This document shows, in pieces, positions 252-2,246 of a stretch of 64,000 nucleotides of DNA. Location: sequence record JN849462.1. The stretch is one strand, 5' to 3'. The first letter of the stretch is position 1. Each line of letters opens with the position of its first letter. The position numbers and the translations under genes were made by a program. The notes beneath the pieces are model-generated. The model was not told the DNA's origin and did no database searches. It saw only the letters and a program-made list of their open reading frames with translations.

Positions 252-375
252 TGGTGGAGAGTGATGGATTTGAACCACCGACCAAAAGATTTACCTAGTT
301 ATTAAGGTTTGCAGCATGAATGCTTGTCAGTATTCTTTAACATTCTTTTGCTCTACCAGACTGAGCTAACTCTCC
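252..375 (-). ncRNA. tRNA-like RNA 1: 124 nt, encoded ACCA end, 54-nt expanded anticodon loop
   Basis: Minus strand: GGAGAGT/ACTCTCC acceptor, GCTC/GAGC D arm, AAAGA/TCTTT anticodon stem, GGTGG-TTCAAAT-CCATC T arm, ACCA. Loop spans 290-343. Confidence 0.85.
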
Positions 376-381
376 ATAATT

Positions 382-499
382 TGAGGGTGAAGTACAGGAC
401 TCGAACCTGCGACCTCCGGCGTGCATGTAAATGCAGAATGAAATCTTATCAGACTTCGTTTTTTGAGCCGGCATTCTAACCAACTGAACTAACTTCACC
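382..499 (-). ncRNA. tRNA-like RNA 2: 46-nt expanded anticodon loop, no encoded CCA
   Basis: GGTGAAGT/ACTTCACC acceptor, GTTC/GAAT D arm, CCGGC/GCCGG anticodon stem, AGGTC variable loop, GCAGG-TTCGAGT-CCTGT T arm. Loop spans 421-466. Confidence 0.85.
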
Positions 500-503
500 A
501 TAG

Positions 504-597
504 TGATCAACAGCCCTCAGAATACCCGCAGTCTACACCCTATAATAAGGGACTATACTGAGTCGTTTAATGAGTCGGATAACTCAACTGTTAATCA
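504..597 (-). ncRNA. Candidate structured ncRNA of about 94 nt
   Basis: Terminal stem TGATTAACAG/CTGTTGATCA encloses a TGAGT/ACTCA hairpin and a nested CTCAG/CTGAG, AGTC/GACT, CCCT/AGGG arm. Lies between two tRNA-like genes. Confidence 0.55.
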
Positions 598-613
598 AAT
601 TGTTAAAAACATA

Positions 614-739
614 TAGTTGCGGGTGCAGGATTCGAACCTACATCACGATCTTATGAATGATATGCGAAATTGATTGCCGTACAGATTCTTATCAGAATCA
701 GTTTTGTGCTACGTGTGCTACCACTTACACCAACCCGCA
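614..739 (-). ncRNA. tRNA-like RNA 3: expanded anticodon arm, 3' end ACTA instead of ACCA
   Basis: TGCGGGT/ACCCGCA acceptor, GTGT/GCAC D arm, GTAGG-TTCGAAT-CCTGC T arm, with an insert of about 65 nt. Confidence 0.8.
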
Positions 740-814
740 ACTATATGCTTTCGGGATGCTTACGCAGGTTCTTCTCTACGTAAGCACAGATCCTCAATGT
801 ATATTTTGCCTTAG

Positions 815-970
815 CTAATCACAACACAACCCAATATCGTGCGCTTTAATTACGGGATTGATGACCCGTTCGCATGTGATTAGCGTAAAAGTATGATTAC
901 GCACCTTTTCTTCTTCAATGTCCAAGGCAAAGAGGACTATGAATACCAGTGCGAGAAGATATACAATCAA
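815..970 (-). CDS. Possible small membrane protein (about 51 aa)
   Basis: GAGGTG six bases before a TTG start and a hydrophobic N-terminus (LIVYLLALVFIVLFAL). The longer ORF-track start overlaps tRNA-like RNA 4. Confidence 0.4.
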   Translation of the reverse strand: MIVYLLALVFIVLFALDIEEEKVRNHTFTLITCERVINPVIKAHDIGLCCD

Positions 971-1003
971 ATTGCTCACCTCGCTTAATAAGTGAGAGTA
1001 CAT

Positions 1004-1126
1004 TGGTCGAGTGTAACGGAATCGAACCGTTCCCACGATCTCCCTATGATATGCGTAAATTGGTTGCTGAATATAATCATGTCTGATTACAGTATGCTAC
1101 GTGTGCTGCCACTACACCAACACTCG
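1004..1126 (-). ncRNA. tRNA-like RNA 4: 123 nt, encoded ACCA end, paralogue of RNA 3
   Basis: CGAGTGT/ACACTCG acceptor, GTGT/GCAC D arm, AACGG-TTCGATT-CCGTT T arm, ACCA. Shares GCACACGTAGCA and CGCATATCAT...AGATCGTG with RNA 3. Confidence 0.85.
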
Positions 1127-1141
1127 ACCAATATACTCTCG

Positions 1142-1293
1142 ATATTTTAAATGTGCGCTACTTGCACGCCGACTGAGCGAATTTTAACTCAGCTAGTTTT
1201 TGTTTGAGACATCGTCCGCTAAGACTATTCTCTGCATGCCAGAACTTATACTGGCTCTATGTATTCATTTCGGCTAACGCACATTTAAAATAT
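1142..1293 (-). ncRNA. Candidate structured ncRNA of about 150 nt
   Basis: Perfect 16-bp terminal inverted repeat (1142-1157/1278-1293), GCCGA/TCGGC inner stem, and hairpins CTGAG/CTCAG (1173-1192) and GCCAG/CTGGC (1238-1255). Confidence 0.65.
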
Positions 1294-1407: not shown

Positions 1408-1435
1408 ATCTTATCAGCTTCTCAGCGAAAGTCAA
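1408..1435 (-). promoter_or_regulatory. Sigma70-type promoter for the tRNA cluster (downstream promoter)
   Basis: TTGACT-N16-TAAGAT with an upstream A-tract. Confidence 0.65.
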
Positions 1436-1499
1436 CATCTTTTTCAAATATTTCATCGAGTTGAAAGTTTGTTTTCTGTCTCTCGACTCGATGAAATAC

Positions 1500-1527
1500 A
1501 TTCTACATCCTTTTCAGATGAAGTCAA
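1500..1527 (-). promoter_or_regulatory. Sigma70-type promoter for the tRNA cluster (upstream promoter)
   Basis: TTGACT-N16-TAGAAT with an upstream A-tract; followed by a 13-bp perfect hairpin (1449-1461/1486-1498). Confidence 0.65.
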
Positions 1528-1543
1528 CAACTATTTTAACTTT

Positions 1544-1798
1544 TTAAACGGAAATGATAATGCCGCTTTCAGTCTCACCTCGTTCAAGCGCAGCGTGCTT
1601 GATCTGAAGTTGTGATACTGCTTGCTGAAGTTCAATAATAGCTTTGTCATAAAGCTTGTTGTTCTCTTTAAGCAAAGCAATCTGATCGGTCTGCATACCA
1701 ATGATGTACGTTAGTAGAACAACGTTCTCATCAGTCGTCAGCGTTTCAGGCGCTTCATTGTACTTCTTCAGCACCGCTTCGGTAGATAGATCAGTCAT
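1544..1798 (-). CDS. Hypothetical coiled-coil protein (84 aa)
   Basis: ORF whose ATG overlaps the 57B stop (ATGA coupling); heptad-like C-terminal half. Confidence 0.7.
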   Translation of the reverse strand: MTDLSTEAVLKKYNEAPETLTTDENVVLLTYIIGMQTDQIALLKENNKLYDKAIIELQQAVSQLQIKHAALERGETESGIIISV

Positions 1799-2246
1799 TA
1801 TTAGCAACCCATTCTAGATCTAATGGTTCGATATATTCATCGACAAGGCGAACCTCTGTATTGATGAACATAGGGGTGATTACGTCGTCATAAGACAATG
1901 TGACGTGCGGAGTATAGTCAGGGTAATCGTGAGTACCACCGATAGAGATAAGGTCTTCGTGACGTTCTACAAGAGCAGGACATGACATCTTAGCAACGAC
2001 CGCGTGTTTACCGTCTTGCGTTTTCCAACAGTCAACTTGTTCAACAGTGGCAACGAAAGTGGTATCTACAACGGGCACATCAATTTGCTTACGACTATAA
2101 AGCACAGTCACGTGGAATTTATCGGGATCTAACGGATTTTTTAGACGAAGCGTTTTTTGCAAGCGAACTAGTTCTTGCTTACTTGCTTCGTCTAATTTGA
2201 TACCAACGTAAGTTCCCTGACTCTCAAGGAACTTAGATAGTTTCAT
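1791..2246 (-). CDS. 57B: gp57B-like 2H phosphoesterase (Acb1 anti-CBASS family)
   Basis: Two HxT motifs (FHVTVLYS, PHVTLSY); WKTQDG, THDYPDYTPH and EYIEPLDLEW match recalled T4 gp57B; syntenic with 57A and 1. Confidence 0.85.
   Translation of the reverse strand: MKLSKFLESQGTYVGIKLDEASKQELVRLQKTLRLKNPLDPDKFHVTVLYSRKQIDVPVVDTTFVATVEQVDCWKTQDGKHAVVAKMSCPALVERHEDLISIGGTHDYPDYTPHVTLSYDDVITPMFINTEVRLVDEYIEPLDLEWVANND

What the first reader, a model, noticed from the sequence alone, without database searches (positions are those of the whole stretch)
252..1126. Family of four tRNA-shaped RNAs sharing a 26-nt module in place of the anticodon loop
Each RNA keeps intact acceptor, D and T arms, but its anticodon region is expanded by about 40-55 nt. 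All four inserts contain the same architecture: a 7-bp stem with a GAYA tetraloop followed immediately by RTNCNGCA. The modules are GAATACT-GACA-AGCATTC-ATGCTGCA (310-335), GAAGTCT-GATA-AGATTTC-ATTCTGCA (432-457), TGATTCT-GATA-AGAATCT-GTACGGCA (675-700) and GTAATCA-GACA-TGATTAT-ATTCAGCA (1065-1090). The stems differ in sequence yet keep pairing across different tRNA bodies, which argues for selection rather than pseudogene decay. Inference: these are tRNA-scaffolded functional RNAs, such as decoys for host anticodon nucleases or tRNA-sensing defences, protein-binding aptamers, or carriers of a mini-intron. Precedent: the T4 tRNA cluster encodes stable non-tRNA species C and D of unknown function.
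Basis: partly seen in the sequence, partly recalled or inferred. Interest (0 to 1): 0.9.

Follow-up and report, generated by a model that had tools for sequence, protein, structure and literature searches.

The report
Phage tRNAs carrying a Ro-docking module
Four tRNA-shaped genes of vibriophage KVP40, long annotated as tRNA pseudogenes, carry in their anticodon arm the small RNA element that marks the RNA partners of a widespread phage relative of the Ro60 RNA-surveillance protein, so they look like a new tRNA/Y-RNA hybrid rather than dead genes.

Summary
The window is Vibrio phage KVP40. On the minus strand lie four tRNA-like genes (252-375, 386-498, 617-739, 1004-1126). Each has intact acceptor, D and T arms and a shared module: an A-rich linker, a 6-7 bp hairpin closed by GAYA, then N-U-N-C-N-G-C-A-A. 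A fifth copy (KVP40 tRNA-Pseudo-3) lies just outside the window.

The module is not peculiar to KVP40. A strict pattern finds it in 49 viral contigs, and in no real case among 185,579 cellular genomes. In most hits it interrupts the 5' strand of the anticodon stem and leaves a normal anticodon loop; 12 anticodons were seen.

The same helix, CAGCAA motif and A-rich strand form the 5'/3' ends of free-standing RNAs next to a DUF2828/DUF7788 gene, on the same strand. That protein's model matches Ro60 over its full length (TM 0.62). KVP40 encodes it as KVP40.0300. A covariance model built only from those RNA ends, permuted in silico, recovers exactly the four window modules.

Best reading: a docking site for the phage Ro60-like protein on a tRNA frame, a circular permutation of YrlA-type Y RNAs. 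Binding and biological role are inferred, not shown. This is a new variant of a known kind.

The parts
252..375 (-). R1 RNA gene (KVP40 tRNA-Pseudo-4). tRNA frame with encoded CCA. A 5-bp closing stem (344-348 / 285-289) encloses the linker AUGUUAAA (336-343), the module and a second small hairpin (293-308).
   Evidence: Rfam tRNA 55.5 bits; coordinates; orthologues in 7 Vibrio phages.
309..335 (-). R1 module: hairpin GAAUACU-GACA-AGCAUUC (318-335) followed by A-UGCUGCA-A (309-317).
   Evidence: Model R1 hit at 308-341, 32.9 bits; independent model R2 16.2 bits.
386..498 (-). R2 RNA gene (KVP40 tRNA-Pseudo-5). tRNA frame. The closing stem CCGGC/GCCGG (467-471 / 416-420) encloses the A-rich linker UCAAAAAAC (458-466), the module and a 10-nt tail. 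There is no anticodon loop.
   Evidence: Rfam tRNA 51.9 bits; orthologues; Aeromonas phage APT65 homologue.
431..457 (-). R2 module: hairpin GAAGUCU-GAUA-AGAUUUC (440-457) followed by A-UUCUGCA-U (431-439).
   Evidence: Model R1 41.2 bits; model R2 21.5 bits.
617..739 (-). R3 RNA gene (not annotated in KVP40). tRNA frame whose anticodon stem is split as CG (712-713) | insert (662-711) | AUC-loop-GAUCG (646-661). The loop is the 8-nt AUUCAUAA.
   Evidence: After deleting the insert in silico, ARAGORN calls a tRNA with the 4-nt anticodon UCAU.
674..700 (-). R3 module: hairpin (U)GAUUCU-GAUA-AGAAUC(U) (683-700) followed by G-UACGGCA-A (674-682).
   Evidence: Model R1 38.7 bits; model R2 27.3 bits, the top hit in the window.
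1004..1126 (-). R4 RNA gene (not annotated in KVP40; trnX in phi-pp2). tRNA frame with encoded CCA. The anticodon stem is split as CG (1100-1101) | insert (1051-1099) | AUC-AUAGGGA-GAUCG (1036-1050).
   Evidence: ARAGORN after in-silico deletion of the insert: tRNA-Pro(AGG).
1064..1090 (-). R4 module: hairpin GUAAUCA-GACA-UGAUUAU (1073-1090) followed by A-UUCAGCA-A (1064-1072).
   Evidence: Model R1 38.5 bits; model R2 25.9 bits.
1408..1527 (-). Two sigma-70-like promoter matches, TTGACT-16-TAGAAT (1527..1500) and TTGACT-16-TAAGAT (1435..1408), facing the four RNA genes. They sit inside a 92-nt direct repeat.
   Evidence: These are consensus matches only; no transcript evidence.

Best explanation
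The four RNAs, plus a fifth just outside the window, are tRNA-framed partners of the phage's Ro60-like protein, KVP40.0300 (DUF2828/DUF7788).

The shared module has three elements: an A-rich strand, a helix closed by GAYA, and N-U-N-C-A/N-G-C-A-A. In many other phages the same three elements form the paired 5'/3' ends and adjacent internal loop of free-standing RNAs encoded beside that gene. KVP40 therefore carries a circular permutation of those RNAs. The ends are sealed by a tetraloop, and the RNA opens at a normal tRNA acceptor stem. The docking site thus projects from the top of the anticodon stem.

Inferred steps:
1. The RNAs are transcribed with the tRNA cluster.
2. They are trimmed like tRNAs; CCA is encoded in R1, R4 and Pseudo-3.
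3. The Ro-like ring binds the helix and loop, as Ro60 binds the conserved stem of Y RNAs.
4. The tRNA body, with an anticodon-like loop in R3, R4 and Pseudo-3, serves as the effector or bait. It brings the ring to tRNA-handling enzymes or to tRNA damage.

Shown here: the anatomy, the covariation, the sequence-level homology to the gene-adjacent RNAs, the gene-RNA linkage and the Ro60-like fold.
Inferred only: physical binding, persistence of the module in the mature RNA, and the biological role (RNA or tRNA surveillance, repair or counter-defence).
For: 1. Linkage to the gene.
- A DUF2828+DUF7788 gene lies on the same strand, 0.2-6 kb from the module, in 12 of the pattern-hit or related loci. 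In Cronobacter phage LPCS28 and Aeromonas phage APT65 it is directly upstream.
- KVP40 has the gene at record 168283-169719, same strand, at the far end of the same tRNA cluster.

2. Two independent sets of 80 viral loci centred on the gene show the motif next to it, on the gene's strand only.
- Set 1: TNCNGCAA occurs 112 times on the + strand and 14 on the - strand in the 500 nt downstream. Background is about 0.33 per kb. 56 of 77 loci have it.
- Set 2: 113+49 (+) against 5+11 (-) in the 500 nt upstream.

3. Those RNAs read 5'-AGGAUAG-G-UACAGCAA ... AAAAAG..-CUAUCCU(G)-3', and their stems covary. tRNA-embedded modules read ...CUAUCCU-GACA-AGGAUAG-U-UACAGCAA, i.e. the same letters joined by a loop.

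4. Independent model. Model R2 was built only from in-silico permuted ends with a random loop. Its four best hits in the 64-kb window are the four modules, in register (27.3, 25.9, 21.5 and 16.2 bits; the next hit is 11.5). It also finds Pseudo-3.

5. Both topologies occur side by side in one phage, LPCS28: two tRNA-topology RNAs, then a YrlA-like permuted one, all after the gene.

6. The protein. The model (pLDDT 89, pTM 0.89) matches only Ro60/TROVE structures over its full length: 2i91 TMq 0.62, 1yvr, 9kop, 9l5y, 9nfa, with E 3e-8 to 2e-6.

7. Precedent. Ro60 orthologues have Y RNAs encoded within 4 kb on the same strand. These carry a tRNA-like domain and a short 5' motif near the terminal stem (PMC4201824; PMC12135203). 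In mycobacteriophage LeBron the RNA after the DUF2828 gene is a weak YrlA match (39.8 bits) and carries CAGCAAU three times.

8. The hairpin covaries, and the module is kept in all orthologues across Vibrio phages.
Against: - No binding, expression or processing data exist. The protein-RNA link is guilt by association plus analogy to Ro60.
- In KVP40 the gene is 9.6-13 kb from the five RNAs, not adjacent.
- For 37 of the 49 pattern-hit loci the gene is not within the fetched flanks. Genome-level co-occurrence was not measured. Among 160 gene-centred loci only a few carry the hairpin (tRNA-embedded) form.
- DUF2828 shows no sequence-level match to Ro60 in the PDB. The motif differs from the GNCGAA/CGAA of canonical Y RNAs.
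- Deleting the insert in silico gives perfect tRNAs, and 30 of 47 distinct examples keep a canonical 7-nt loop. That would also suit an excised intron.
- Thermodynamic folding of single sequences does not single out the proposed arm (z-scores -0.9 to -2.6).
Confidence: 0.6

Rival explanations
1. The insert is a new kind of small tRNA intron. It bulges from the 5' strand of the anticodon stem and is cut out by phage or host enzymes. The nick, held together by the intact 3' strand, is then sealed to give ordinary tRNAs. The conserved module would be the recognition element for that machinery, possibly with the Ro-like protein as a cofactor.
For: - In-silico deletion of the insert yields tRNAs that ARAGORN accepts: Pseudo-3 gives Asn(GUU), R4 gives Pro(AGG), and examples from other phages give Lys(UUU) and Glu(UUC).
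- 30 of 47 distinct module RNAs keep a 5-bp (split) stem and a 7-nt loop with U33 and R37.
- The Pseudo-3 anticodon GUU is conserved, with a covarying stem, in five phages.
- RNA-end-processing genes (PF04308 RNaseH-like, metallophosphoesterase; in a Listeria phage RtcB and an RNA ligase) lie near the Ro-like gene.
Against: - The same core forms the free 5'/3' ends of stand-alone RNAs that have no exons to join.
- R1, R2, APT65 and LPCS28-A have no anticodon loop to restore.
- R3 orthologues carry 8-nt loops and change anticodon between close relatives.
- KVP40 already has an uninterrupted tRNA-Asn(GUU).
- There is no bulge-helix-bulge, and 41-54 nt is far too short for a group I intron.
- No intron-less allele was seen among the orthologues.
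Confidence: 0.15
2. The RNAs are decoys or sponges for host tRNA-directed defences (anticodon nucleases, tRNA-sensing systems) and act without the Ro-like protein. The module would only make them non-translatable or nuclease-trapping.
For: - One tRNA frame carries different anticodon loops in related phages. Acceptor GCCGCUG occurs with GUC, GUU, UCU and UUC. R3 has AUUCAUAA, AUUUCCAA, CUUCAAA or AUUCUAA. R4 has AUAGGGA or AUUAGGA.
- GUN and UUN anticodons are common among the loops seen. From general knowledge, these are the tRNA families attacked by colicin E5-type and PrrC-type nucleases.
Against: - It does not explain why the module's helix, CAGCAA motif and A-rich strand are shared with the RNAs flanking the Ro-like gene.
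- R1 and R2 lack any anticodon loop.
- No defence gene or nuclease was tested.
Confidence: 0.1
3. They are tRNA pseudogenes disrupted by a small mobile DNA element (MITE-like, with inverted repeats), as the 'tRNA-Pseudo' annotations imply.
For: - KVP40, phi-pp2 and phi-Grn1 annotate them as pseudo or low-score tRNAs.
- The helix looks like a short inverted repeat.
- Homing endonuclease genes (GIY-YIG, HNH) occur in several loci.
Against: - The stems change by compensatory substitutions rather than being conserved in sequence.
- Tertiary-interaction nucleotides and all three arms are intact.
- Orthologues keep the module over 20-50% divergence.
- The motif shows a strict strand bias relative to the gene (112 vs 14; 162 vs 16), which is not expected for DNA insertions.
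- The insertion point is the same in unrelated tRNA frames.
Confidence: 0.04
4. The module is a small self-cleaving or self-splicing ribozyme embedded in tRNAs.
For: Small ribozymes are known next to phage tRNAs (general knowledge). The module has a conserved single-stranded segment beside a helix.
Against: - No Rfam ribozyme family matches, even at E<=10.
- Only about 15 conserved positions and one helix are present.
- The same core is terminal in stand-alone RNAs.
Confidence: 0.02

Closest known systems
YrlA-type bacterial/phage Y RNAs with Ro60 (Rsr) (Rfam RF02553; Chen et al. 2014, PMC4201824)
   Same: - A small RNA with a tRNA-like domain (T arm, D arm, acceptor) joined to a helix plus a short conserved motif that docks a Ro60-fold ring protein.
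- The RNA genes lie near the protein gene on the same strand.
- Several paralogous RNAs occur per genome.
- Free-standing relatives of the KVP40 module have exactly the YrlA layout.
   Different: - The topology is permuted. KVP40 RNAs open at a normal acceptor stem (CCA encoded) and the docking helix is closed by GAYA. YrlA opens at the docking helix and closes the acceptor.
- The motif is N-U-N-CAGCAA opposite an A-rich strand, not GNCGAA.
- The protein is DUF2828/DUF7788, not Pfam TROVE.
- Many members keep a true anticodon stem-loop.
- Rfam YrlA scores are 29.8-39.8 bits against a threshold of 69.
Thermus phage phiLo Ro60 with Yrl1/Yrl2 (PMC12135203)
   Same: A phage-encoded Ro60-fold protein binds phage-encoded stem-bulge-stem RNAs found next to its gene. 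9kop and 9l5y are among the best structural matches of the KVP40-type protein.
   Different: The Yrl RNAs use a CGAA bulge and are not tRNA-framed. Sequence identity to DUF2828 is about 14-16%.
Intron-containing tRNAs (archaeal/eukaryal bulge-helix-bulge introns; bacterial and phage group I introns)
   Same: An extra segment interrupts the anticodon arm of an otherwise complete tRNA gene, and its removal in silico restores a standard tRNA.
   Different: - The position is in the stem's 5' strand (about 27/28-28/29), not 37/38.
- There is no bulge-helix-bulge and no group I core.
- The insert is a conserved structured module shared with non-tRNA RNAs.
T4 stable RNAs C and D (species 1 and 2)
   Same: Stable non-tRNA RNAs encoded in the tRNA cluster of a T4-type phage, with tRNA-like 3' parts and unknown function.
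   Different: They have no GAYA hairpin and no CAGCAA core. Neither covariance model scores above noise in the T4 tRNA region (best 11.4 bits).
Class II tRNAs (long variable arm)
   Same: An extra helix leaves the tRNA core at the junction of the D stem and the anticodon stem.
   Different: The extra arm here leaves from the 5' strand of the anticodon stem, not from positions 44-48. It carries a conserved sequence motif.

Membership tests
tRNA (Rfam RF00005) | Acceptor stem, D arm and T arm with conserved tertiary nucleotides | tested here: met
   R1 55.5 bits and R2 51.9 bits. R3 and R4 have 7/7 acceptor pairs, 4/4 D-stem pairs and GGTTCGAnTCC.
tRNA (Rfam RF00005) | Continuous 5-bp anticodon stem closing a 7-nt loop with U33 and a purine at 37 | tested here: not met
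   ARAGORN finds none. The stem is split by 41-54 nt, or the loop is replaced. The R3 loop is 8 nt.
tRNA (Rfam RF00005) | Aminoacylation and decoding | not testable with these tools
   Needs acid-gel Northern blots or tRNA-seq of infected cells.
YrlA / Y RNA (Rfam RF02553) | Score at or above the family threshold | tested here: not met
   29.8 bits against 69. The match spans the R2 T arm to the R1 D arm, so it only reflects tRNA-likeness.
YrlA / Y RNA (Rfam RF02553) | 5'/3' ends paired in the Ro-binding stem, acceptor closed by a loop | tested here: not met
   KVP40 RNAs have the opposite (normal tRNA) topology. Permuted relatives exist in LPCS28, Felix-like and LeBron phages.
YrlA / Y RNA (Rfam RF02553) | GNCGAA(N)G motif near the 5' end | tested here: not met
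   The motif here is N-U-N-C-N-G-C-A-A. The paper's motif is from PMC4201824.
YrlA / Y RNA (Rfam RF02553) | Encoded near a Ro60 orthologue on the same strand | tested here: inconclusive
   The partner gene has a Ro60-like fold but is DUF2828, not TROVE. It is adjacent in LPCS28 and APT65, but 9.6-13 kb away in KVP40.
YrlA / Y RNA (Rfam RF02553) | Bound by the Ro protein | not testable with these tools
   Needs RIP/CLIP or EMSA.
RNAs flanking phage DUF2828 (Ro60-like) genes (class defined here) | Helix whose one strand is followed by N-U/A-N-CAGCAA and whose other strand is preceded by an A-rich run | tested here: met
   Consensus of the permuted ends is AnAnnAnnATCCT-nnnn-AGGATnG-n-TnCAGCAA. 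Module consensus is AAAAAnnnATnCT-GACA-AGnnTAnn-TnCAGCAA. Model R2 recovers all four window modules and Pseudo-3.
RNAs flanking phage DUF2828 (Ro60-like) genes (class defined here) | Same strand as, and close to, the DUF2828 gene | tested here: inconclusive
   Same strand and same tRNA cluster in KVP40, but about 10-13 kb apart. Adjacent in 12 other loci.
Spliced tRNA introns (bulge-helix-bulge or group I) | Bulge-helix-bulge at the exon-intron junctions, or a group I catalytic core; insertion at 37/38 or in the loop | tested here: not met
   The junctions lie on one strand of the stem. The insert is 41-54 nt. No Rfam intron match at E<=10.
T4 rnaC / rnaD | Sequence or structure similarity to T4 species 1 and 2 RNAs | tested here: not met
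   No module is visible in the T4 sequences. Models R1 and R2 give nothing above 11.4 bits in the T4 tRNA region.

The most novel reading that the evidence does not exclude
A Ro-like ring is docked a few nucleotides from a real, exchangeable anticodon loop, so each RNA is a bait for one class of anticodon-directed attack. When a host nuclease cuts the loop, the new single-stranded 3' end lies next to the docking helix and can thread into the ring's central hole, the way Ro60 holds the 3' ends of misfolded RNAs. The RNP would then hold the halves for repair by neighbouring end-healing or sealing enzymes (PF04308 RNaseH-like, metallophosphoesterase, RtcB or Rnl in some phages), or report the attack. 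On this reading, phages carry a modular tRNA-damage surveillance particle. The 50-year-old puzzle of why Y RNAs mimic tRNA would gain a direct test system.
Probability: 0.2. Interest if true: 0.9.

Novelty: new variant of a known kind. Interest (0 to 1): 0.78.

Why it matters
- It re-reads five KVP40 'tRNA pseudogenes', and many look-alikes in other phages, as members of an unrecognised RNA class.
- It gives a candidate RNA partner and a recognisable docking motif (helix + NUN-CAGCAA + A-rich strand) to DUF2828/PHROG 850. That family is found in 711 deposited phage genomes and has no known ligand.
- It shows that the tRNA/Y-RNA relationship exists in both circular permutations. One form keeps a working-looking anticodon loop, which makes the role of tRNA mimicry in Ro RNPs experimentally approachable in a T4-type phage.
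- It also warns annotators that 110-125-nt 'tRNA-OTHER' calls in phage tRNA clusters are not junk.

Tried and rejected
- tmRNA-like reading (GCA as a resume codon). In-frame stops follow in only 3 of 5 KVP40 copies and in none of the LPCS28 copies. There is no G3:U70. Dropped.
- GCA as a Cys anticodon, as tRNAscan-based annotations assume. Position 33 is not U, and no stem closes around it.
- T4 RNA C/D homology. Fetched and read; no module and no model hit.
- gp57B next door as a tRNA-splicing 2'-5' ligase. It is Acb1, the anti-CBASS phosphodiesterase (PF23474, 1.7e-46), and is unrelated.
- Sequence search of the DUF2828 profile against the PDB. No Ro60 hit; the fold comparison was needed.
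- A 6-mer complement test for the terminal stems over 400 nt was uninformative, because shuffled controls did as well. It was replaced by a stricter 7-mer definition and model R2.
- Scanning gene-centred loci with model R1. Few hits, because most of those RNAs have the open (permuted) topology. This led to the permutation idea.
- Literature. The library held no paper on DUF2828 RNAs or on tRNA genes with this insert. Burroughs & Aravind 2016 on RNA-repair systems is not held.
Full report
**Where we are.** The window is Vibrio phage KVP40 (AY283928.2). Window base 1 corresponds to record base 180716. The finding lies at the upstream end of the phage's large tRNA cluster, which is transcribed on the minus strand. 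KVP40 annotates two of the four elements as tRNA-Pseudo-4 and tRNA-Pseudo-5. The near-identical phage phi-pp2 annotates all four, as Asn, Phe, OTHER and trnX. The papers on phi-pp2 and phi-Grn1 mention them only as low-score 'pseudo-forms' with GCA/TGC anticodons (PMC3468402; PMC5107563).

**Checking the observation.** Read on the minus strand, four RNAs of 113-124 nt are present: R1 375..252, R2 498..386, R3 739..617 and R4 1126..1004.
- Rfam's tRNA model scores R1 at 55.5 bits and R2 at 51.9 bits, with 49- and 45-nt insertions in the anticodon region.
- ARAGORN finds no tRNA anywhere in the window.
- R3 and R4 escape Rfam but have perfect acceptor stems, D arms and T loops.
- Each RNA contains an A-rich linker, a 6-7 bp hairpin closed by GACA or GAUA, one nucleotide, and then U-N-C-N-G-C-A-A.
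The description is right except that R3 and R4 keep an anticodon-like hairpin after the module, and two of the stems have one mismatch.
- A fifth copy, KVP40 tRNA-Pseudo-3, lies 1.3 kb outside the window.

**Not chance, and not private to KVP40.**
- A strict pattern (CTGAYAAG-N6-TNCNGCA, then a T loop within 20-50 nt) hits 49 stretches of IMG/VR viral contigs.
- In 35 distinct modules the hairpin, which the pattern does not specify, is 86% paired. It has 56 double-sided changes against 18.9 in shuffles, and no shuffle reaches that.
- The same pattern in one genome per species of 185,579 bacteria and archaea gives 16 matches. These have 3-6 of 7 pairs and no tRNA context, i.e. chance level. By my own arithmetic, about 30 chance matches are expected in 596 Gb.
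- A covariance model of the module (R1) finds exactly four hits in the window at 32.9-41.2 bits. The next hit scores 13.2 bits.
- Related copies occur in a Cronobacter T4-like phage (LPCS28) and in an unrelated 85-kb Aeromonas phage (APT65).

**Anatomy across the family.**
- In 30 of 47 distinct viral examples the RNA parses as a complete cloverleaf. The 5-bp anticodon stem is split on its 5' strand (0-2 nt before the insert, 3-5 nt after) by a 41-54-nt insert. A canonical 7-nt loop with U33 and R37 follows.
- Twelve anticodons occur. One acceptor stem (GCCGCUG) is found with GUC, GUU, UCU and UUC.
- Deleting the insert in silico gives tRNAs that ARAGORN accepts: Pseudo-3 gives Asn(GUU), R4 gives Pro(AGG), and R3 gives a tRNA with an 8-nt loop.
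- Among orthologues in eight Vibrio phages the module is always kept, with compensatory stem changes.
- The Pseudo-3 loop keeps GUU, with a covarying stem. The R3 loop changes between AUUCAUAA, AUUUCCAA, CUUCAAA and AUUCUAA. R4 has AUAGGGA or AUUAGGA.
- R1 and R2 have a continuous 5-bp stem that encloses the module. R2 has no anticodon loop. R1 has only a vestigial AUGUUAA within the linker.

**The lead: a neighbouring gene.**
- Clustering ORFs around the pattern hits showed one family in 12 loci, always on the RNA's strand and often only 0.2-0.5 kb away. It is DUF2828 + DUF7788, which is PHROG 850 'RNA-binding protein'. Mycobacteriophage annotators call it 'Ro-like RNA binding protein'.
- tblastn finds it in 711 deposited phage genomes. 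These include KVP40 (KVP40.0300, 49% identity, same strand, at the other end of the tRNA cluster), Felix O1-like, Listeria, Staphylococcus, Campylobacter, cyanophage, Lak phages and mycobacteriophages.
- Its profile does not hit Ro60 by sequence.
- An AlphaFold model of the KVP40-type protein (pLDDT 89.1, pTM 0.89) matches only Ro60/TROVE structures over its full length. The matches are Xenopus Ro60 (TMq 0.62), human Ro60 and Thermus phage Ro60, with E 3e-8 to 2e-6. Bare vWA domains follow far behind.

**The link between gene and motif.** Two independent sets of 80 viral loci centred on the gene were fetched.
- Set 1: CAGCAA piles up on the gene's strand just after the stop codon. TNCNGCAA occurs 112 times on that strand and 14 on the other within 500 nt, against about 0.33 per kb elsewhere. 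56 of 77 loci have it.
- Set 2: the pile-up is just upstream of the gene, 162 against 16.
- The RNAs there have a terminal stem with covarying strands. The 5' strand is followed by N-U-N-CAGCAA, and the 3' strand is preceded by an A-rich run.
- Their middle part varies. It can be a small hairpin, a YrlA-like permuted tRNA domain (T arm, closed acceptor, D arm), or a domain of 150-300 nt.
- The same layout appears after the gene in Felix-like phage 'dune' and in LeBron. In LeBron one of three copies is a weak Rfam YrlA match at 39.8 bits. In Listeria phage LMSP-25 three copies lie upstream of the gene.
- No Rfam family covers these RNAs at gathering threshold.

**Circular permutation.**
- Typical free-standing ends read 5'-AGGAUAG-G-UACAGCAA ... 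AAAAAG..-CUAUCCU(G)-3'. tRNA-embedded modules read ...A-rich-CUAUCCU-GACA-AGGAUAG-U-UACAGCAA... (for example L037, L018, L053).
- So the module is the two ends of such an RNA joined by a tetraloop, and the RNA is opened instead at a tRNA acceptor stem.
- As a test that does not use any tRNA-embedded example, I took 80 gene-adjacent RNAs and joined their 3' end to their 5' end in silico with four random letters. I built model R2 from these and searched the window.
- Its four best hits are the four modules, full length and in register (27.3, 25.9, 21.5 and 16.2 bits). The next hit is 11.5 bits. Pseudo-3 scores 16.2 bits.
- LPCS28 has both topologies in a row after the gene.

**Mechanism.**
- Established knowledge: Ro60 binds the conserved stem and motif near the paired ends of Y RNAs. 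Bacterial and phage YrlA RNAs carry a tRNA-like effector domain. Their genes sit within 4 kb of the Ro gene on the same strand (PMC4201824). A phage Ro60 binds Yrl RNAs found next to its gene (PMC12135203). Jumbo-phage ROT/TROVE proteins have been proposed to form an RNA-repair platform with a tRNA-like partner (PMC7824862).
- By analogy, I infer that the KVP40 module docks KVP40.0300, and that the tRNA body is the effector or bait.
- The genes most often found beside DUF2828 on the same strand are a PF04308 RNaseH-like protein (57 of 160 loci, and the next gene in KVP40) and a metallophosphoesterase (41 of 160). A Listeria phage adds RtcB and an RNA ligase. That points to RNA end-processing or repair, but it is context only.
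- Binding, the mature form of the RNAs and the biological role are not shown.

**Rivals.**
- An excised intron fits the perfect tRNAs obtained by deletion. It does not fit the exon-less free-standing relatives, the copies without an anticodon loop, or the absence of intron-less alleles.
- A Ro-independent decoy does not explain the shared core.
- A pseudogene or mobile-DNA reading is contradicted by the covariation and the strand bias.
- A ribozyme has no support.
- T4 RNA C/D are unrelated by sequence and by both models.

**Verdict.** The best explanation is a tRNA-topology member of a large, undescribed class of RNAs that partner a phage Ro60-like protein. This is a new variant of the Ro/Y-RNA theme. 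Confidence in the homology to the gene-adjacent RNAs is about 0.85. Confidence in the full explanation, including protein binding, is about 0.6.

Noticed in passing
outside the window: L001 4387-4502 (-), AY283928.2 179301-179416: Fifth family member, KVP40 tRNA-Pseudo-3. It is a complete tRNA-Asn(GUU) frame with a 41-nt module insert between stem positions 28 and 29. It is identical in VH7D and ValKK3, and the anticodon is conserved in K567 and D479.
   Followed up: yes
window 1791-2246 (-): gp57B, annotated in relatives as 'RNA ligase/cyclic nucleotide phosphodiesterase', is Acb1, the anti-CBASS 2H phosphodiesterase (PF23474, E 1.7e-46). It is not a tRNA ligase and not part of this system.
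   Followed up: yes
window 1142-1160 / 1275-1293: A 19-nt inverted repeat (95% complementary) encloses 114 nt. It lies between the promoter-like sites and R4 on the transcribed strand. It could be another structured RNA or a processing signal; it has no CAGCAA motif.
   Followed up: no
window 1418-1458 / 1510-1550 and 1449-1498: A 41-nt direct repeat (73% identical, 92 nt apart), each copy holding a TTGACT-16-TAnnAT promoter-like site on the minus strand. A 19-nt palindrome lies between the copies. It looks like a duplicated early promoter unit.
   Followed up: partly
window 815-1036 (-): The 73-aa ORF KVP40.0319 between R4 and R3 has no Pfam match. This stretch is deleted or replaced in several relatives (BLAST coverage drops to 75-89%).
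   Followed up: no
L145 6982-7509 (+), AY283928.2 167708-168238: The gene right after the Ro-like gene in KVP40 is a PF04308 RNaseH-like protein. The same family is the commonest same-strand neighbour of DUF2828 genes (57 of 160 viral loci). A metallophosphoesterase is second (41 of 160).
   Followed up: partly
L004 3731-3867 (-) (Cronobacter phage LPCS28): A YrlA-like, circularly permuted tRNA-like RNA with the terminal stem AGGAUGC/GCAUCCU and CU-ACAGCAA. It sits directly after two tRNA-topology module RNAs and the Ro-like gene. A clear TTGACT...TATTAT promoter precedes the first RNA.
   Followed up: partly
L058 4422-4973 and 1935-2033 (Listeria phage LMSP-25): A ROOL RNA match (88.5 bits, just under threshold, E 1e-16) and a drum RNA match (50.2 bits) lie in the same tRNA cluster, about 1 kb and 4 kb from the Ro-like gene. 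Three small AGGAAnC-NAA-CAGCAA RNAs lie directly upstream of the gene, with RtcB and an RNA ligase downstream.
   Followed up: no
L006 3430-3463 region (Vibrio phage 1.081.O) and R3 orthologues: The R3 orthologue of phage 1.081.O has the 7-nt loop CUUCAAA (anticodon UCA, which would read UGA). KVP40, nt-1 and F86 have 8-nt loops. These are possible suppressor or frameshift-type loops, if the RNAs decode at all.
   Followed up: no
L062, L148, L188 and other loci, 150-300 nt beside the DUF2828 gene: Larger RNAs (about 190-300 nt) share the same terminal stem and CAGCAA core. They have conserved interiors (for example ...GAGAGUUUCGAUUUUCUCUC...AAAAAGUAG...) and match no Rfam family at gathering threshold.
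   Followed up: no
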